From Ruditapes philippinarum (lineage: Eukaryota): 61,194 nt of DNA. Positions 1 through 55,387 of the stretch are shown one piece after another. The number at the start of each line of letters is the position of its first letter. Position 1 is the stretch's first letter. The stretch is taken from contig NW_026861066.1 in NCBI RefSeq assembly GCF_026571515.1, positions 1-61,194 on the forward strand, read 5' to 3'. A model generated the notes under the pieces. That model was not told where the DNA came from. It worked only from the letters and a program-made list of their open reading frames with translations, and did not search any database. The position numbers and the translations under genes were made by a program.

Positions 1-1618
1 TCCAAACTTAACAGGAATGTTCCTTTGGTGGTCACCTTTAAAAATTGTTTCAAAGAATTTAATTCCATGCAGAACTCTTGGTTGCCATTGGCAACCGAAA
101 AAAAAAACTTTAAATATCTTCTTTTAAAAAACCCTTAAGAGCTAGAGCTTAAAGATATTTGGCATGAAACATCTTCTAGTGAGTGTCTACCAAAGTTTTG
201 TTCAAATAAAATCCCTGGGGTCAAAAATTGGCCCCCCGCCCCAGGGGGTCATTTGATTTTCCCTATATGCATATAGTAAAAACTTACAAAATCTTCTTTG
301 AATGAACTCAAAGAGCTAAGAGCTAAGATATTCAGCATGAAACATCTTCTAATTGGGTGTTCTACCAAGTTTGTTCAAATAAAAAGCCCTGGGGTCAAAA
401 ATTGGCCCCGCCCCGGGGGTCATTGATTTTTGTTTTTTTATATTGTATAGCAAAAACTTAAAATAATCTTCTTTGAAAAAACCCAAAAAGCTAGAGTTTA
501 GATATTAAAAGCATGAAACATCTTCTAGTGAGTGTCTACAAAGTTTGTTCAATAAAAGCCCTGGGTCAAAATTGGCCCCGCCCCGGGGGTCTTGATTTTC
601 CCTATATGCAATAGTAAAAACTTAAAAAATCTTCTTTTGAAAAAACCTAAATACCTAGAGTTTAGATATTTGGCATGAAACATCTTCTAGTGAGTGTCTA
701 CTAAGTTTGTTCAAATAAAAGCCCTGGGGTCAAAGTTGGCCCCGCCCCAGGGGTCATTGATTTTCCCTATATGCATATAGTAAAAACTTAAAAATTCTTT
801 CTTTTAAAGAACCCAAAGAGCTAGAGCTAAGATGTTCAGCATGAAACATCTTCTAATGAGTGTGTACCAAGTTTTGTTCAAATAAAAGCCCTTGGGTCAA
901 AATTTGGCCCCGCTCTGGGGTCATTGATTTTCCTTATATGTGTATAGCAAAAACTTAAATAATCTTCTTTTGAAAAAACCCAAATAGCTAGAGTTTAGAT
1001 ATAAAGCATGAAACATCTTCTAGTGATTGTCTACAAAACTTGTTTAAATAAAAGCCCTGGGGTCAAAATTTTGCCCCCGCCCGGGGGGTCTTGATTTTCC
1101 CTATATGCATATAGTAAAAACTTAAAAAATCTTCTTTGAAAAAACTTAAATAGCTAGAAGTTCAGATATTAAGCATGAACATCTTCTAGTAACTGTCTAC
1201 AAAGTTTGTTTCAAATAAAAAGCCCTGGGGTAAAAACTGGCCCCGCCCCAGGGGTGTCATTTTTTTTAACTATATGTGTGTAGTAAAAACTAAAAAACTT
1301 CTTTAAAAGACCCAATGAGCTAGAGCTTAGATGTTTAGTATGAAATATCTTCTTATGGATGTCTACAAAGTTTGTTCAAATAAAAGCCCTTTGGTGAAAA
1401 TTGGCCCTGCCAGGGGCGGGGGGGGGGGGGAGGGTGGGTGGGGGGGTGAGATTGTTTTTCATTACATGTGTTGTAGTAAAAACTTAAACATTGTGAAACA
1501 TCTTCTAATGAGTGTCTTCCAAGTTTGTTCAAATAAAAGCCCTGGGGTTTAAAACTGGCCCCACTCAGGGGGCCTATATACAGGTGAGCGACCTCAGGGC
1601 CATCATGGCCCTCTTGTT
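1..1618 (-). mobile_element. Helentron/HINE-like non-autonomous element carrying a ~165-bp tandem satellite array (truncated by window edge)
   Basis: About 9 tandem units containing GGGGTCAAAATTGGCCCCGCCCC and GCATGAAACATCTTCTAGT; ends in CAGGTGAGCGACCTCAGGGCCATCATGGCCCTCTTGTT, the reverse complement of the start of the copy at 34568; lies in an MTRF1L intron. Confidence 0.75.
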
Positions 1619-23818: not shown

Positions 23819-24836
23819 CGAGGGTTGTCACAAGATTGTTTAAAAGCTAGATAAAATAGGTACGAATTTGATATTTTACTATGTTATAGACTCATATTAT
23901 TGAAACATTTTCACAAATTTACATAGAAAAATATCAACAAACAACAAACATATGCCGTAAATACCATGGCAACTATCTGAATCGTGGCGCGCGTCAAACG
24001 TCAAAGACCGTGTTAAATCTATATAAGGCGCCTTTCTCAAATACATGAAATACTCTCAATGGCTTTCAATGCAAAATAATGGTGCAGCTTTACCCATAAA
24101 TCGTCAATTACAGACTTAAATCATGTGGTTGTTAATGTCTATTGAATGTTTGGATGGCATGCATAAATTTTGGCTATACGCGAACTTCCAGTCCCGTTGC
24201 ACCTGCTTTTAGCTGTAGGAAATAGGCGATGGAGATTGGTCTTCCTTTTCGTGTCTTCCTTATTTTCGCTTTTTGTAGTGCAGAACTCTTGTTCTGTTCA
24301 TGCATGTAGTAAACAAATGCTCAGGATATGTTGCTAAACTGTTCTATTTGGTATATTTGTTGAAAATCGTAACAAGTGTCATCTCGAAATAGTCACGAAA
24401 CCTGAGTGATCTGTTCACTGCACCGCAAATTCTTCCAACGTCGCCATTTTAACTTTCCTATTTTCTACGAGATATTTTCATTTATCTGTAGCATGTTCGT
24501 TTCTTAAGTTATTTAACTAAAATTTTCTGAGATAATGTAAACATAGCAGCAGAGGAAGTCAACGTGTCATTGTGCAGACACATAATCAGATATTTGAAAT
24601 ATACGTAATTAATTTTAGCCTATTCATAACAAAATGTAAATTATTTGACGTGCGCCTGCAACTCAAACCAATGTTGTTCATACTGAAATTTCTAAGTAAC
24701 TAGAGTAAATATTTTATAAATGATTTGTTGTAATGTTAAATAATAAACTTAACGGTTAAATGTGTGAATTATTATTTATTGGCGTTAAAAATGAACCGTC
24801 TATAAAATTTGTCACAGACTTTTGGGACAACCTTCG
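23819..24836. mobile_element. Tc1/mariner-type non-autonomous element (~1 kb)
   Basis: TA|CGAGGGTTGTC...GGGACAACCTTCG|TA; matching left-end fragment at ~60512-60556. Confidence 0.75.
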
Positions 24837-24888
24837 TACCAGTAATGTTCTAGTAATATAACAGAAATATACCAGTACAGTACTAGTA

Positions 24889-24917
24889 AAGAGATGTAGA
24901 TGTTATCTATGTCTCTG
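24889..24917. mobile_element. 29-bp hairpin micro-insertion with 7-bp TSD
   Basis: ACTAGTA|AAGAGATGTAGAT-GTT-ATCTATGTCTCTG|ACTAGTA; opposite-orientation copy of 52099-52127. Confidence 0.7.
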
Positions 24918-25781
24918 ACTAGTAATATGACGGTCACATGTTAGTTAAGTACCAGAAATAAACAAGTAATATATCAGCCATATACTAGTAATGTACTAGT
25001 AATACACCAGAAATATCCTACAACACAAAGGTTCAACACAAAAGCAAAACTTACATAATGACAAAAATGAGGAATATTGAACTACATCTCAGGGATATGT
25101 CTGATAATCAAATTATTCATTTCTTAAACTTTCATAAAGGCCCTTTATGAATTAATATCAACAACTTAATTTTTCAAAATTTGGTTTATAGTTACATGTA
25201 TTTCTTTTCTAAAATGCCGAAAAAAATCCCTGAAATTTCAAAGATGAAGGTTGTATTTAAAGTGCATACCAAACACTGTATTTATCAAGCTAGGCATACA
25301 TATATATATACATCTATTTTGGTTTAAATGATGCTGAAAGCACATAAATTCACATGGATGATGACTGCAAAGACAATGTCTTAATTCTTACATATATAAA
25401 ACTAGTAAAAATTGATGGGCTTAATATATTTTACCTAAATTTGAGAAATAATTCCCTTTTTTTTATTACATGTAGTTGTTGCTTTTTTTACAAACCTCAC
25501 AAAGCAAAATAGAGCATACATATCATGATTAAAAGCAAATCAATTGTCGTACACAGGTAAAAGCTTAACAATTCCGGGTATTTTATAAAACATAATATTC
25601 AAATAATATACTGGGCATAGTTTAAATTGATTGCTGTTAACAGTTTTATGTAAGGCACATTGTTGTTGTTTTTTTTTGGTAAAATCATAAAAGTTTATAA
25701 AAGGCACCATCTTGTCTATAATACTTTGGCGTTTTTTTTTGGCTTGCATGTTTTTTCTTCTCTCGCGAGCTGTTTCATCTT

Positions 25782-28700: not shown

Positions 28701-31700
28701 ACTGTCAATATAATGTATTTTTGCTAATTTTGCCAGAGGGAAATACTTTTTATAATAACTGGGAGTTTGTAACATGTGTAACCATGTTTGCTAAAGACAA
28801 GGTTTACAGTATGTATGTTCTTGAACATACAAGCTTTCAACATGTAATAAACATGTTTTAAAACATCTTCCTTGCACATCTAGAGTTAATACCAAAAACG
28901 TTTTGTCAAGTGACAATGGCTGCCTAAATAATGCAAAATTTTGTATAACACAAAGAAAACAGGTATTTATATTACACCAACAGACGTACAAGAGCTTACA
29001 TAAGAAACTTAACCTTAAATTTATATATGTGAAAAGTGATGGAGCAAACATGTAGGAATGTTGAAAGCTTGCATAACTCGAAGACTTTTGATTACACATA
29101 TGTTGTTCAAACTTCTAGCATATTACACATAACTTACACATCTTCAGTATGTACACGCTGATCTCGATTCAAATTCAGCAATTGTTTCATTTCATCAGCA
29201 GACAACTCAAAATCGAAAATCTGGAAAGCAAATTTCTATTTACTTCCATAATTATCAACTTGCTTTTATCCAATTTCCATAATTATCAACTTGCTTTTAT
29301 CCAATTTCCAAAATTATCAACTTGCTTTTATCCAATTTCCATAATTATCAACTTGCTTTTATCCAATTTCCATAATTATCAACTTGCTTTTATCCAATTT
29401 CCATAATTATCAACTTGCTTTTATCCAATTTCTGAATTTTTTTATCTTGTACAAATATCTATGTACATCATAACATGTATCTAGATTCAAAACTTTGGTT
29501 TAAGAAATTATGAACACAAATACAAATCATAAATTCTGACACACAGTTACATGCATGCTTGATATTAGTATTTTCATTAAAATAATTATAATTAAATTAA
29601 CAACAATGTTATACTTAAACAGTTACTAAAACTGTTATAACATAAAAATTAAACAAGAGATGTCAGTATGATAAAATGCTTGACTATTCTCTGTGTTTGG
29701 TGTAAATAAAACCAGAGCCCCGATAATGTTGAATTTTCTATGCTGAAGAAAAGCCATTATTCTGTTAAAATGCTCATAATAATTATGCACCTTTGAGAGT
29801 TCCTTTTATGCTCTCAAATAAGTGTGTGAAGTTTCAATCCATTTCAATCATTAATTTTTAGAGTTACTTACTTGCACGAAAAAAACTTAATCAAAGTGTT
29901 ACGTTGATGCCAATAGCTTTTACTATTCTCTGAATTGTTGAGCTAATGAATGAAAGAAAAGTTCATATAAATATGAAAACTTATAAACTTGTACATGAAT
30001 TATACAGCACCTGGAAATTTTCTTGTATTCTTTGTGGCCTAACACTTTTTGGTACAACTGACAAACCTCTTTGTAAAAGAAACCTTAAATTCACCTGGAA
30101 AAAAAATCACAAAACAACTATTTCATCATAATCATGAATTGCCATAATTTATTTTAAATGTTCTGTAAATATACCTGTTGAAAATGCAGTCAATGAAATT
30201 TTATAAAGGAACAGTTCAAGAACAACTTTTTTTTTCCATTTTATTCTTAATTAAAAAAAAAAACTGGCTTAATATGGAGAATGATAGATCTTTGAATCTC
30301 TGACTATCAAGACATGTTCTGTTTGTCAACTTGATACATTACAATATATTAAGCCACTTCATTTGTGCTGGGATAAAAAAAAAATTTGTTTTTGTTTCAG
30401 ATTTGTGGCACAAGGAAAAGTTAGAAACTACTTGAAAAGATAAGTTTTTAACTGACAAAGAATTCAAAAACTTCTCATGTTAAAAATATTAGCGGTCTTA
30501 TATTAAATAGTGGCATCAATCCTTCAAAGTATAACCAGTGTTAAGTCACATGGTGCACGAGATATCTAGCAGAAATGATGTGGTCTACAAACCAACAAAC
30601 AGACTTATCATCCTCCAGTTTTCATCAACATATTTACTCATCTAACTCATCTATTTACAATAAATAATACAGTATGCATTAATCACATCTACACAGTTTT
30701 CAGTCATTCATTTCATCATTCAAGCATTACACCAAACAGAATACCTCATATCATCACCTTAGTGCAGAATTGAGTTAAGTCCTTCTAAATTTAATAGGAG
30801 TTATTGCACTAAGGTGACAATTTATGCATCATTCCAGAAATAAGCTGATGTCTAAGTAAAACCACTGATTTATTATTAGCTAGATTGATACCATTCTCAA
30901 GCTCTTGGCGAAAATCTGTCAGATTCTAACCAAAATCTAGGAGGGACAAGCAGCTTGAGGACCGAGAGAGCACCCAATTACAAATTACAACTTACCCACT
31001 TTCCCCCCCTGTAAGACACTGGTAAGTACTAAAGAAATGAGGTGCAATGCCTACCTGTGCAGGAGATTTATTTTTAGCTTTAGCAATTTCTAATAATACT
31101 GGTTCTTCCAAACACCTTGGTGGTGGCTCTCTGTAAATATATATACAATATAAACAAATATAACACTAATAACCTAGATGCTTCTCATGCCACCAGTGCA
31201 GACCAAGATCAGCCGTCACACTTGTGCTATCTGATCATCTGATCATGGTTTACACTATTCACTATTCAGTCAGTACTTATTTTGAAACTTTCCTTGAAAA
31301 TGATGAATTGACTTAAAGATGTTTTATGTTATTTAAAAACTAAATGTGTCAAATGTAAGATTTCCAAGAAAAAAAAATTTGAACCAATAACAACTCTAAT
31401 TTTTAAACAGATACAAAAATCAGAAATACAAGAAAATATATCTGAACCTATAACAACTCTAATTTTTAATCAGATACAAAATCAGAAATATAAGGAAAGC
31501 ATAAATAACAATAAATCTTTAACATTACACCAAGGTCTTTAAAACTTCTATTTGAAAGACCCTGATTAAACTAATAATTTCATTCACACAAAATTTGATG
31601 AAAGTAAGGTTAATCTAAATGTACATTTATTACATATACCGATAACCAAAATTAAGAGTAAAAACAATTTGCTCAGAAAAGTGAATCAGAAAAATAATTA

Positions 31701-50028: not shown

Positions 50029-52098
50029 TATAGCTTTATTTAATACTTATAAATAAAATATTGATGAAATAAAATGCAGATCGATTTTAATTTTCCGTAT
50101 TTTCATTGTAAAAATTAATTTTTCACTGCAAAGAAGCATATTTTCTGTATCTTCACTTGTGTCATGCCAGACTACTTTCTTATAAATTCAGCCAATACAC
50201 AAAATTAAAAGTAAATTCTTCCCGATCATAAGGTGAAAAAAGAGAAAAAGTATATAGAAAACAGAAAATTCAAGTTTTTTTAGCAATACAGAATTTATTT
50301 TCATTTTTTGGTATGAAAATTATCATTTCATGAGTGGCAGTAGCCATTTATTTTCATACCACTTGATGAAAATAAATCCTGTATTGATAGAAAAAACTTG
50401 AATATCCTCTTTTTATACACTTACTTAGTAGTTTTAGGATTAAGATGAACAGCACTTTTCTAATAGCCATGGTGAAAGGACAGTAAAGAACAAGTAAGAA
50501 AATGCCCTGTAAACATGATTTATTACTGTAAATATAGAAGCATAAAATTTACTTTTGATATGATAGTCATCATGTAAGCTATAAAAACAGGAATAAGAAA
50601 TAAAGACAGTAGCACACTTGTACACAATAGTTGAAATAAATATCAGAACAAGCATTGTATAGTATTCTATCAGAAATTAAATATTTCAGTTTCTTATATT
50701 CTTTTCTATTGATCATGTAAAAGAATAATGTAATTCAAGCGTTCAATGCAACAATGATGTATATTTATTAATAAACAAAAAGAACAATTTATGATTTTAA
50801 TGGGATACAACCTAGATTATGGCAATAAAAGAAACTGACTTTTGATAGCAAATTATGTGTATACAAAAAGTCTTTACATTTCATATACATGTACAAACAA
50901 AAATGAGTAAAAATAAAAAATTTACAGATTTTTTTTTTGGTAACTAGACACTTTCAATTTCATTAGTTCCACTTATTTTTGGCTATTGAATGTAGCAAAG
51001 TTACAATGAAAAACATCCGTAGACACCATATGACTTTAAATGTCTAAGTCATCTTCACATAGCTTACTCATTTATTTAATAAACTGAATATGTTTGGTGA
51101 AAAAATCCAAAAACTAGCATAACATGACATACGCTGTCAAATTTTACATGATAGTTAGATTTTTTTTTAACAAAACTGCAATTTTGTGGCACACATAAAC
51201 CTGTATTCTAGATACAAAAGAAAGATGAAAATATATCGGGACATCAATTATCACTACCACTGTTTCACAGACTTAACACAGATTTATGTTGAATACTTGA
51301 TATACAAATGTACTTGTGTTCCCTTAGAAGCACAAGAATTTAACACTAAACTTGCTGAATTTGTATAATTTATTTGCCTTGCTTTGAAATTGAAACAGTC
51401 TATGTCAAAATAAAAGGATTTCAATACCATAATACTGATCTTGAAATACCAACTGTATAGAGCCAGTAAGCCTGCACGGTTGTGCAAACAGGTCTGGCTC
51501 TATACTGGCAACAAAGGCTATAGACTTTAAGTTCCAGCAGGTTAAGGGTTTAATCTTGAGTAAACAGCAACAATATAGACTTTAAGAAAACAATTTATAG
51601 AAAGCTTAACAGAAATGTTCCACTTTGACTTGATACAAAACATCTAGGGCATGGATTAACTAAATCTAGAACTTGGTTCAAAAAATTTAAGGACGTACAA
51701 ATCAAGGACTAGGTGCAAAGATATACATGTATATAGGATTAACAACAATGTAATCAAGTGCTTTGTGCAAAGAAATTCAGGACTTAGTGCAAGATAATTG
51801 TAACCAATATGAAGTAAAAGAATAAAATACATTCTTTTTGCACCAGACTGAAAAACAAAAAATTGTAAAAATATATGTTTCACAGTTCAAATTTAGGCAA
51901 CATGGTATATAAAAATAAAGCCTTAGCTTGGATACAATATAAATTTTCCTTCCTAGAAAACATGAAACATCACAATGTTGGATAAATAGACATAATATCA
52001 AAACACCGCACAAATATTTTGCTTTAAAACGGACAAAAACAATGAGAAAAATTGAATGACAAGGAGCATTATAAAAATTATCAATTCCTACATATTAT

Positions 52099-52127
52099 CA
52101 GAGACATAGATAACATCTATGTCTCTG
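52099..52127. mobile_element. 29-bp perfect hairpin micro-insertion with 7-bp TSD
   Basis: ATATTAT|CAGAGACATAGAT-AAC-ATCTATGTCTCTG|ATATTAT. Confidence 0.75.
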
Positions 52128-52768
52128 ATATTATAAGATGATAATATTTTTCCTCTATTATAACTCCACTACATCTAGTAATGTGTAAAAACTTAGATTT
52201 GTGCAGAAGGGAGTTGATTGCAAAAGCTGCTGCAATTTAAGAGAGAGAAAAATTAAACATTTTTCTTCCTATTTCACAATATCATTATCCATGTATCTCA
52301 ATTCATAAATCTAAATCTTTATAACAGTAATTAACATTTAACAATCAAGGCATTTATATAATCTATAAACATGGTTGGTGTAAATACTAAATTTTATCAA
52401 TTATAGTTTCCATCTTTATCAAAGTAAGCATTTTTGCAGTATTATAAAATCATTATAATGTAACATATTATGCAACACGTCTACTTACTGACTACAACTG
52501 ATTTCCAATACCCTGTATTATCTCCGACTATTGGGATTGAGTGATTGTGAAAATGTTGAAATATTACCTTTTTATGTTCCGTGTGTGAATGAAATAACTT
52601 TAATCATTGTAAATGGCAAACTGGTGTATGAAAATGATTAATGTTGTTAAATGTACCATTGATTTACCTATTCTTTAAATATGTATGAATTAGGGAGTGT
52701 ATGTTAATATTTATAACAAAAATACATTGAAATTTCACAGAATACACCAATTTATCGTAAATCCCTAA

Positions 52769-52908
52769 CTTAGTGCAGTAACAGGTTAACTCCAAATAAA
52801 CAGTAACAGGTTAACTCCAAATAAACAGTAACAGGTTAACTCCAAATAAACAGTAACAGGTTAACTCCAAATAAAATTTAATAAGAGTTAACCTGTTACT
52901 GCACTAAG
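52769..52908. repeat. Short hairpin element CTTAGTGCA...TGCACTAAG with an internal 25-bp x3 tandem; relatives at 30754-30817 and 53056-53122
   Basis: Inverted termini; unit CAGTAACAGGTTAACTCCAAATAAA repeated three times. Confidence 0.6.
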
Positions 52909-55387
52909 ATGACAAAATGTTCTATTTTGTGTTGTTCTAGAATGTTTACCATATATTATACATGTACACATTGCCCTATCATGCAACAAGTTCTACTTAA
53001 CATGGACCACATTTGTATACATGTTCTAAATTTGTCCTAAGAGAATGATTCTCATCTAAGTGCAGAAATTGGTTAAGTCCTTCTAAATTTAACAGGAGTT
53101 AACCTGTTATTGCACTAAGGTTACAAGTCATGTCCGAGGCAGATTGTTAAATAATATCAAACCATCTTAAGTAAAATCCCAAATAAGATCTTTATCACAA
53201 TTTTTCATGCATGCTTGGCCACTCAATAATGTGAACCATGAGCTTGTTTGAAATTCAGCGTAACACTGATGTATGGAAATAAACTAGAAAAAGAGGTAAA
53301 GCCAATATTTCTAGGAACCCTATATTTAATTGTGGTACACAAATATACTATCAGATAGCGATTTTATAAAAAAGTCAATAAAACACTGGGAATATGCCTC
53401 AAATTTATTATAAAAATACGAGACTGGTGACCAGTTTAAGACTGAAGCATTTGATTGGTTGACACTTGACCAATGGTTGATTTTTTTTCTCTATTTTTAG
53501 ACTGTTCTTAAATTTCTGGTTTATCAGAACAATTTCACAATGCTAATGCGCAATATTTCAGCAGTTTGAGCAGAATACAATCATCAAATACCTCCTTAAA
53601 AGTACCCAAAAAAAAACAAAACACTTTCTGATAAAATCTACAAGGCAGGGAGGGACTTTGACAATAAATCATACAACATAAATCATAACATCCTTAATAT
53701 CTGAATTACTTAATATCAGGAAAAGGACATTTCTACAAATTATTTTCCCATGATAGTGTAAAAATTTGTTTTATTACTCTGTTTCTTTATGAATCTATTT
53801 TTATATTTGGCCACATCTCAATCATGTGTGATCACTTGAGATTTTTCTTAGATTACAATTACGGTATATTTTATGAAAAAAAAATGTTGTAAAGCTTCAA
53901 TTAACATGTAATTACAAAATCATTTAAAAAAATTTATTCATAAAAAAAAACACCAAGACACTCTTGTGAATAAACAACTTATAAACACTCCAATGTTGTA
54001 AAATATGCACCATTTTTCCACTTTCTAAATCATTTACATTTATACTTTGATTCATTATATATAATATTCAACATGGAAACCTTAAACATGTAAGGTTACA
54101 AAAAATGAAAAATTTTAGTGGCTCAATTTAACTGAGCATATTTATGGAGAAAGATAAATGCCAGATTCCCTCTATGACATTTCAAGCCATGTGGGAGAAT
54201 GAATATTTTATAAACAATACATTAACTATTTTCTCTTCATTATGTCGTCCATAGCACGATCATGTTTACAAATAGCACTATATCACATATTATCAGATAA
54301 TACATTGTATATAGCAATAGATTTTACAAAACAAATACATGTATCTTAAATATCAATCAAGTCTGGTTGAACATGTATATAAAATCTGAAAACGGAAAAA
54401 TGCAAGAATATATCTGGATTTAGAAAAAAAACTACATGCCAACAGAAATATTGCATAGAAACTGTAAATTTATAATACAAAAAATGTCTATATAACACTT
54501 AAAAACTAATCTATTTCTATTAAATTCTGTAATTACCCTCCTAAAAAATCTAAAAATGAGCCCCCACCCCTACCTGCTCCAACCCAAGCAAAAATAAATT
54601 TCATTTAAATAAATCCCACTCAAATAATTGTATGACAGTCAAAATGACTTGTTGGCAAAACTGTGATCGATTTGGCTAAACACATTTTTTGTAACCATTC
54701 AAGTTAACTTTATCCCATTGTACAACAGTAACTCACATGTGTTTAATTACAAATATATCATATCTAGACCTAATGGTTTGCTATAAATTTCAACTAATTA
54801 AGAGTACATAATATTGTATCTATTGGTGCACAGTACTGATAGATAATCAAAAGTGTCATTCAATGGGAACTAACAGACCGAGTATGTTTCAATATTTTTC
54901 AAAACATTTTAAAAAATTTGAAAGTCAAGAATTTTAAAATACAAAACTGCCTGTTTCTTGAAAACAACAAAAGTTTAAACTTATAATACAGGTTTAAAGG
55001 GTGTTGAAATGAACCACATGAAATATTTTCAACCCTTTGATGAAACGTAAGACATTTCTTTAAAATGCCTTGAAAGAACTAATAACCCCTATATTACTGT
55101 TAGCTCTTTTTTCTGCAACCTTGAAAAAATAATTTTTCAAACTCATGAAATTTGAAATTAAGAAGCAATAGCAAAAAAGGTGCATATTATATGAAAACAA
55201 AAGCAAAACCACTGGTTATAATTAACAAGCTAGTGAACAACATTTTAGTGATTTAAGTAAATATCAATTAAAGAAACAAACAGTAAGTGTTAACCCATTA
55301 AAAAGAGCATACCTCCAAACTAATATTTAAATTCTGAAGATAAAAAAACAACAACAATTCACACATCTGCCTAACTAATTAATTAAT

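What the first reader, a model, noticed from the sequence alone, without database searches (positions are those of the whole stretch)
52092..52134. 29-bp 'micro-transposon': two TIRs and a 3-nt loop with its own 7-bp TSD, present twice
Seen: CAGAGACATAGAT-AAC-ATCTATGTCTCTG is a perfect 13-bp hairpin flanked by the direct repeat ATATTAT. The same element occurs in reverse orientation at 24889-24917 (loop GTT, 3 mismatches) flanked by a different 7-bp direct repeat, ACTAGTA. Different TSDs at two loci indicate independent insertions. The CA versus TG difference in the arms fits decay of an ancestral CpG. Known: CANRG termini with 7-8 bp TSDs characterise the P (THAP-transposase) superfamily. Inference: this is a mobilised element much shorter than typical MITEs. 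A 29-bp substrate is hard to synapse by ordinary cut-and-paste, so either an unusual mechanism operates or these are recurrent footprints in which a longer element left only its TIR tips after incomplete gap repair.
Basis: partly seen in the sequence, partly recalled or inferred. Interest (0 to 1): 0.8.

Follow-up and report, generated by a model that had tools for sequence, protein, structure and literature searches.

The report
Transposon excision scars, not a micro-transposon
The two 29-bp hairpins are scars left where a roughly 507-bp cut-and-paste transposon jumped out of a mollusc genome; they are not tiny transposons, and the scars never keep more than 17 bases of a transposon end, matching the 17-base staggered cut of the fruit-fly P element.

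Summary
Window 52099-52127 is a perfect 13+3+13 palindrome between two ATATTAT copies. Window 24889-24917 is a decayed copy between two ACTAGTA copies.

The "mobile 29-mer" reading fails.
- **Parent element:** the arms are the tips of a ~507-bp MITE with a 27-nt TIR starting CAGAGACATAGATAACA. It has 7-bp TSDs in 18 of 20 copies, about 680 candidate copies, and best copies 95-100% identical.
- **The "loop":** it is simply TIR bases 14-16 of one end.
- **Junction spectrum:** the same tips occur genome-wide as a continuum. There are 118 sites of 18-28 bp, 303 of 29 bp (at most 3 mismatches) and 184 of 30-60 bp. 24 of 30 fetched sites have exact TSDs, counting one read as 8 bp; five more match 6 of 7.
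- **Inflated count:** the 29-mer total is swollen by two host repeats that carry a scar. Only 19 exact AAC-type 29-mers lie outside the larger host repeat.
- **Ceiling:** retention stops at 17 nt per end. Only 4 sites reach 20 nt or more.
- **Drosophila match:** the junction classes match published P-element donor-site repair junctions.

No autonomous transposase copy was linked, so the P-type assignment is inferred. This scan reached the same reading earlier on other DNA of this genome (s1-806777, s1-792575).

The parts
52092..52098 (.). Left copy of the 7-bp target-site duplication ATATTAT at site 1
   Evidence: Read directly. It is identical to 52128-52134. The 7-bp length equals the TSD of the parent MITE in 18 of 20 copies.
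52099..52127 (.). 29-bp excision scar. It holds parent TIR bases 1-17 from one end joined to TIR bases 1-13 (reverse complement) from the other, sharing 1 base at the junction.
   Evidence: The retention analysis gives L=17, R=13, overlap 1. Contigs of four runs from four studies reach into it from one or both sides.
52128..52134 (.). Right copy of the 7-bp target-site duplication ATATTAT at site 1
24882..24888 (.). Left copy of the 7-bp target-site duplication ACTAGTA at site 2
   Evidence: The motif also recurs nearby, so this duplication is weaker evidence on its own.
24889..24917 (.). Older 29-bp scar of the same junction class in the opposite orientation. The right 17 nt match the parent TIR exactly; the left 12 nt carry 3 substitutions at TIR positions 1, 7 and 8.
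   Evidence: An exact 17-nt TIR match lies at 24901-24917.
24918..24924 (.). Right copy of the 7-bp target-site duplication ACTAGTA at site 2

Best explanation
Both 29-mers are donor-site scars. A copy of a ~507-bp non-autonomous transposon (MITE; 27-nt TIR beginning CAGAGACATAGATAACA) once sat at each site, flanked by the 7-bp duplication it made on insertion. A transposase supplied in trans cut it out. The cut left up to 17 nt of each TIR on the flanking DNA, most simply as two identical, non-complementary 17-nt 3' single-stranded tails, as Drosophila P transposase does. End joining then sealed the break. In the AAC-type 29-mer, one tail is kept whole (17 nt) and the other is kept to base 13. 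Its terminal A17 pairs with T13 of the other tail, the gap is filled and the 4-nt flap is removed. Other pairings or blunt joins give the 26-, 32- and 34-bp palindromes, and templated filler gives the longer forms. Shown: the parent family, the shared TSD length, the junction spectrum and the 17-nt ceiling. Inferred: the tail structure, the joining steps and the P-type identity of the transposase.
For: 1. Parent: at least 467 TIR ends carry the same 17-mer followed by something other than T. They pair into ~507-bp elements with 7-bp TSDs in 18 of 20 copies. There are 682 first-look candidates, and the 40 scored are 94-100% identical.
2. Variable junctions on the same tips: 184 sites have 4-34 nt between exact 13-nt arms, and 118 sites are 18-28 bp long. 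24 of 30 fetched sites have an exact flanking duplication, 23 of 7 bp and one read as 8 bp; five more match 6 of 7 and one has none.
3. Every centre reads as parent TIR bases 14-17 plus 0-2 nt of overlap, or filler copied from the TIR.
4. Ceiling: only 4 sites keep 20 nt or more of one end with the other tip within 34 nt. Two are templated duplications and two are one 55-bp deletion derivative.
5. The 29-mer is not a dominant lineage. There are 19 exact AAC-type copies outside host repeat 1, with 18 different left 7-mers. Twelve of the 15 fetched 29-mers sit in two host repeats. The AAT-loop 29-mers are a different join, 15+14.
6. Host repeat 1 has 44 copies with a single GTAGGAA and no insert, so the scar plus the second GTAGGAA is the derived state.
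7. Published Drosophila P{wa} donor-site junctions show the same structure: TSD, up to 17 nt, 0-3 nt of microhomology or templated insert, up to 17 nt, TSD. One identical junction was recovered 14 times independently (PMC2895639). The 17-nt stagger is documented (PMC7776569), and Galileo of the P superfamily makes 7-bp TSDs (PMC4168063).
Against: No locus was seen in both states, filled and scarred. Contigs of four other samples all carry the scar at site 1. No copy of host repeat 1 carries the full MITE at the scar position. No autonomous copy with these TIRs was found: the three long copies are MITEs with nested inserts and no ORF. None of the 45 P-transposase-like matches lies on the same contig as a TIR place that was listed, but those lists reach only contigs up to C3805-C7522, so about 26 of the 45 could not be checked. 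The one transposase locus fetched lacks the TIR. The 1-nt pairing proposed for the 29-mer is weak chemistry and is only inferred. A second scar family in this genome appears to keep 19-20 nt, so 17 nt may not be universal here.
Confidence: 0.88

Rival explanations
1. The 29-mer is itself a mobilised minimal MITE: two TIR tips and a loop that the transposase cuts and pastes as a unit.
For: Identical AAC-type 29-mers lie at 18 or more different sites, each with its own 7-bp flank. TSDs are perfect at the five independent copies examined.
Against: The same tips occur with dozens of other centres, from 18 to about 55 bp, with the same TSD length. The 29-mer lacks TIR bases 18-27 on one side and 14-27 on the other. 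Its frequency is similar to the 26-bp and 34-bp classes. Most of the 303 copies were amplified passively inside host repeats. The same length also arises from a different join, 15+14. Identical junctions recur independently in Drosophila repair experiments. Drosophila P needs 138 and 216 bp of its ends to move (PMC1562414).
Confidence: 0.03
2. The scars are extreme internal-deletion derivatives. They would arise from abortive gap repair (copying from the sister chromatid, then end joining) or from replication slippage, not from direct joining of the cut ends.
For: Such deletion derivatives exist: one 55-bp form keeps 37 + 18 nt and occurs at two sites. This process is the known origin of internally deleted P elements (the Galileo paper's discussion).
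Against: Abortive synthesis should give a smooth spread of retained lengths. Instead there are hundreds of sites with 17 nt or less and only 4 with 20 nt or more in the same size range.
Confidence: 0.05
3. They are excision scars, but of a transposon from another superfamily (or an undescribed one) that makes 7-bp TSDs and a long staggered cut, not of the P/THAP9 type.
For: No transposase gene was linked to these TIRs.
Against: The only cleavage geometry I found described that leaves 17 nt of each end at the donor site is that of P transposase. 7-bp TSDs occur in the P superfamily. The genome holds at least 45 matches to the P-transposase RNase H-like domain, several with open frames of 790-858 aa.
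Confidence: 0.15

Closest known systems
Donor-site repair junctions after Drosophila P-element excision (P{wa} assay; Chan, Yu and McVey 2010, PMC2895639)
   Same: The architecture is the same: TSD, up to 17 nt of one TIR, 0-3 nt of microhomology or a templated insert, up to 17 nt of the other TIR, TSD. Blunt 17+17 joins, 1-2-nt microhomology joins and TIR-templated fillers all occur. Identical junctions recur independently.
   Different: The fly junctions are laboratory events at one locus with an 8-bp TSD. Here they are hundreds of fixed or old germline scars in a mollusc with a 7-bp TSD, from a non-autonomous element whose transposase is unidentified.
P-derived MITEs (Anopheles P-MITEs, PMC1562414; BuT5 in Drosophila, PMC3698922)
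   Same: The parent here is a short non-coding element with TIRs and a constant TSD length, present in hundreds of similar copies.
   Different: Those MITEs were tied to P master copies through shared ends; no such link was made here. Their TSD is 8 bp in Anopheles. In the passages I read, those papers do not describe genome-wide scars.
Galileo and 1360 (P superfamily, Drosophila)
   Same: They make a 7-bp TSD.
   Different: Galileo has very long TIRs and a strong GTANTAC target preference. The TSDs seen here show no obvious consensus.

Membership tests
Excision footprint (donor-site scar) of a cut-and-paste transposon | Both copies of the target-site duplication are kept, at the same length as the parent element's TSD. 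| tested here: met
   Both window sites have 7 bp. 24 of 30 fetched sites have an exact duplication, one of them read as 8 bp. The parent MITE has 7 bp in 18 of 20 copies.
Excision footprint (donor-site scar) of a cut-and-paste transposon | The sequence between the TSDs consists only of the parent's terminal bases, with or without filler. | tested here: met
   The retention analysis against the parent TIR explains all 30 local sites and both window sites.
Excision footprint (donor-site scar) of a cut-and-paste transposon | The junction varies among independent sites. | tested here: met
   Lengths run from 18 to about 55 bp, with dozens of junction types.
Excision footprint (donor-site scar) of a cut-and-paste transposon | A parent element with the same termini exists in the same genome. 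| tested here: met
   A ~507-bp MITE with 682 candidates.
Excision footprint (donor-site scar) of a cut-and-paste transposon | The same locus is seen both occupied and scarred. | tested here: inconclusive
   Four other samples show only the scar at site 1, and contigs drop rare alleles. Host repeat 1 shows empty and scarred copies but no occupied copy.
P superfamily (P / THAP9 / Galileo / 1360) | An autonomous copy with the same TIRs encodes a THAP plus RNase H-like plus GTP-binding-insertion transposase. | tested here: inconclusive
   None was found among the copies fetched. The genome has 45 PF21787 matches, but none lies on a contig with a listed TIR place, and about 26 lie on contigs the truncated TIR lists never reached. 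The one locus fetched lacks the TIR.
P superfamily (P / THAP9 / Galileo / 1360) | TSD of 7-8 bp | tested here: met
   7 bp. Galileo makes 7 bp and P makes 8 bp.
P superfamily (P / THAP9 / Galileo / 1360) | The 5' strand is cleaved 17 nt inside the TIR, leaving 17-nt 3' tails at the donor site. | tested here: met
   This is indirect. Scars keep at most 17 nt per end, 17+17 blunt joins recur, and only 4 sites keep 20 nt or more. Biochemical mapping is not possible with these tools.
MITE (the 29-mer as a mobile unit) | It carries the complete TIRs that the transposase recognises. | tested here: not met
   It holds 17 + 12/13 nt of a 27-nt TIR and no subterminal sequence.
MITE (the 29-mer as a mobile unit) | One sequence type has multiplied at independent sites beyond what recurrent repair gives. 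| tested here: not met
   There are 19 exact copies outside host repeat 1, comparable to the 26-bp and 34-bp classes. The bulk of the 303 copies are carried in two host repeats.

The most novel reading that the evidence does not exclude
A minority of the short palindromes were re-mobilised. Candidates are the identical AAC-type 29-mers found at 18 or more different sites. If so, 17 + 12 nt of TIR with no subterminal sequence would be enough for synapsis, cleavage and integration by this transposase, making this the shortest eukaryotic transposon substrate I know of.
Probability: 0.04. Interest if true: 0.8.

Novelty: new member of a known kind. Interest (0 to 1): 0.42.

Why it matters
It removes a tempting false lead: there is no 29-bp transposon here. 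What remains has some value.

- **Cleavage geometry:** more than 600 scars from one MITE family are a natural germline record of how this transposase cuts. The 17-nt ceiling argues that the unusual stagger of Drosophila P transposase also operates in a mollusc, if the P-type assignment holds.
- **Repair spectrum:** the scars give a spectrum of end-joining outcomes in a bivalve germline: blunt joins, 1-2-nt microhomology and templated filler.
- **Excision rate:** excision of this family has been frequent relative to its roughly 680 surviving copies.
- **Annotation:** genome annotators should mask these short palindromes as scars. Copy counts can be inflated when a scar rides inside another repeat.

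Four searches of the paper library found no report of such scars in molluscs.

Tried and rejected
- **Fetching transposase loci:** The one 10-kb locus obtained (L051, an 807-aa P-like frame) has neither this TIR nor clear TIRs of its own.
- **Long TIR-bounded copies:** the copies of 1178, 1306 and 3834 bp are MITEs with nested insertions and have no ORF of 90 aa or more.
- **Polymorphism test at site 1:** contigs of four runs show the scar and no empty or filled allele. Contigs break inside the palindrome and drop rare variants, so this is weak evidence.
- **Full MITE at the host-repeat scar site:** none was found. The three hits are mutated 29-mers.
- **'CANRG' in the paper library:** only unrelated hits came back.
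- **Second family's left 17-mer (window 31531-31547):** the search found no parent.
- **Chance palindrome:** rejected, with 0 of 100 shuffles matching and reversed-pattern controls of 0.
- **Hairpin RNA or regulatory element:** not pursued, because the structure is fully explained by the two TIR tips.

Full report
**Observation.** Site 1 is a perfect 13-nt inverted repeat around AAC at 52099-52127, between two copies of ATATTAT. Site 2 is the same element at 24889-24917 with the loop read as GTT and three substitutions, all in the left arm, between two copies of ACTAGTA. A search allowing three mismatches finds only these two in the window, and none in 100 shuffles. The window is AT-rich, about 31% G+C. 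It belongs to a 1.4-Gb assembly. Run labels and earlier notes of this scan point to a bivalve; one note says Manila clam. I did not verify the species.

**Genome-wide picture.** The 29-mer occurs 303 times at up to three mismatches, against none for the reversed control. Flanks of 15 fetched copies show perfect 7-bp duplications at 14 of them. Twelve of the 15 lie in just two host repeats with identical wider flanks:
- Five share the duplication GTAGGAA.
- Seven lie in a TA-rich repeat and carry AAT or ATA loops.
- Only three are independent sites.

When I excluded host repeat 1 by its first TSD base, 19 exact AAC-type 29-mers remained, with 18 different left 7-mers; the window's own site is one of them. 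The large count therefore mostly reflects passive copying of a scar inside other repeats.

- With exact 13-nt arms and 4-34 nt between them there are 184 sites.
- With 9-nt tips and 0-10 nt between them there are 118 sites of 18-28 bp.
- Of 15 fetched variable-junction sites, nine have a perfect duplication (eight of 7 bp, one read as 8 bp), five match 6 of 7, and one has none.
- Recurrent classes include a 26-bp perfect palindrome, 26-bp 16+10, 25-bp 17+8, 27-bp, 32-bp 16+16 and 15+17, and 34-bp 17+17.
- Longer forms carry filler that copies pieces of the TIR.

**The parent.** I searched for the 17-mer CAGAGACATAGATAACA followed by any base but T. That gave 467 ends, most continuing as one of two conserved sequences. 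These ends pair about 500 bp apart. Twenty fetched elements show a 27-nt TIR with one mismatch. Seventeen are 495-515 bp long, and 18 of the 20 have perfect 7-bp duplications. Three longer copies are the same MITE with nested insertions and have no coding capacity. A DNA search with one copy found 682 first-look candidates; the 40 scored were 94-100% identical, so the family was active recently.

**Reading the scars against the parent.** For every local site I measured how far each side matches the parent TIR.
- The AAC-type 29-mer is 17 nt of one end plus 13 of the other, with one shared base.
- The window's site 2 is the same class in the other orientation, with an exact 17-nt right end.
- The AAT-type 29-mer is a different join, 15+14, of the same length.
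- The 34-mer is 17+17, the 32-mers are 16+16 or 15+17, and the 30-mer is 16+14.

The "loop" is therefore TIR bases 14-16, not a separate part. No unambiguous site keeps more than 17 nt. Requiring 20 nt or more of one end with the other tip within 34 nt gives four sites genome-wide. Two are tandem re-copies of the TIR start, and two are one 55-bp deletion derivative.

**Polarity.** Host repeat 1 has 44 copies with a single GTAGGAA and no insert. The scar plus the second GTAGGAA is therefore the derived state. No copy carries the full MITE there.

**Other individuals.** Contigs from four runs of four studies reach into the palindrome at site 1. In two runs they do so from both sides, and in the other two from the right side. 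I saw no empty or occupied allele. Contigs break at the palindrome and drop rare variants, so this shows only that the scar is widespread.

**Mechanism.** Drosophila P transposase cuts the 3' strand at the element end and the 5' strand 17 nt inside the TIR (PMC7776569). The donor DNA is left with two identical, non-complementary 17-nt 3' tails (PMC2895639). The junction tables in that paper have the structure seen here: TSD, up to 17 nt, 0-3 nt of microhomology or a templated insert, up to 17 nt, TSD. They include blunt 17+17 joins, a 16+(1)+12 join, and one junction recovered 14 times independently.

By inference, the mollusc element is cut the same way. The 29-mer would arise when the terminal A17 of one tail pairs with T13 of the other. 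Pairing with T9 predicts a 25-mer, and I found it at three listed sites. The 26-bp palindrome fits pairing at the self-complementary TA at positions 13-14.

**Family assignment.** Two features fit the P superfamily: 7-bp TSDs, as in Galileo (PMC4168063), and the 17-nt ceiling. The genome also has 45 matches to the P-transposase RNase H-like domain, several in open frames of 790-858 aa. I could not link any of them to these TIRs, and about 26 lie on contigs the truncated TIR lists never reached, so membership is inferred. Drosophila P needs 138 and 216 bp of its ends to move (PMC1562414). That also argues against a mobile 29-mer.

**Earlier notes of this scan.** Two notes on other DNA of this genome (s1-806777, s1-792575) already read short 7-bp-flanked palindromes as P-type excision scars. 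I treated them as leads and tested the claim on this family. A note on this window (s1-813892) led me to 31531-31564. That is a scar of a second family with 524 exact-tip sites and equally variable junctions. The second family seems to keep up to 19-20 nt, and its parent was not found.

**Verdict.** The mobile micro-transposon reading is rejected, and the footprint alternative is strongly supported. This is a new instance of a known kind of feature, of moderate interest as a natural record of cleavage geometry and germline end joining in a mollusc.

Noticed in passing
window 31524-31571: A 34-bp imperfect palindrome at 31531-31564 lies between ATTACAC and ATTAAAC (6 of 7 match). It is a scar of a second family whose tip is CAGGGTCTTTCAAATAGAA. 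That family has 524 exact-tip sites genome-wide with variable junctions (27-, 30-, 32-, 34-, 38- and 42-bp forms). Retention appears to reach 19-20 nt, not 17. The parent element was not found.
   Followed up: partly
L002, L003, L005, L011, L012 (around position 1501 in each): This is an interspersed repeat, called 'host repeat 1' here. One lineage carries the 29-bp scar with the duplication GTAGGAA and then multiplied. 44 other copies have the empty site. The order of events is: MITE insertion, excision, then amplification of the host repeat.
   Followed up: partly
L001, L004, L006, L007, L009, L010, L014 (around position 1501 in each): A TA-rich repeat carries a 15+14 scar (AAT or ATA loop) and accounts for about 40% of the exact 29-mers listed. 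It shows that one length can hide different junctions.
   Followed up: partly
L020, L021, L025, L030 (1501-1548; L030 1043-1090): A 48-bp form has 22 nt of AT-rich filler between the tips. It always lies in the same wider flank with the duplication TTTAAAA, so it is one event copied inside another repeat and not a 48-bp MITE.
   Followed up: partly
window 52842-52975, 53043-53100 and 51301-51434: Word depth in other individuals' contigs is hundreds to thousands of times that of the flanks (up to about 70,000 against roughly 5-90), with many loose ends at 52874 and 52908-52920. These are very high-copy repeats next to site 1.
   Followed up: no
window 24800-25010: The motif ACTAGTAAT / ACCAGTAAT recurs at least five times around site 2. 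This suggests a short degenerate tandem or dispersed repeat into which the MITE had inserted.
   Followed up: no
L051 4314-6737 (+): An open 807-aa frame matches the P-transposase RNase H-like domain. No terminal inverted repeats are recognisable within 10 kb. It may be a domesticated THAP9-like gene or an element with very short TIRs.
   Followed up: partly
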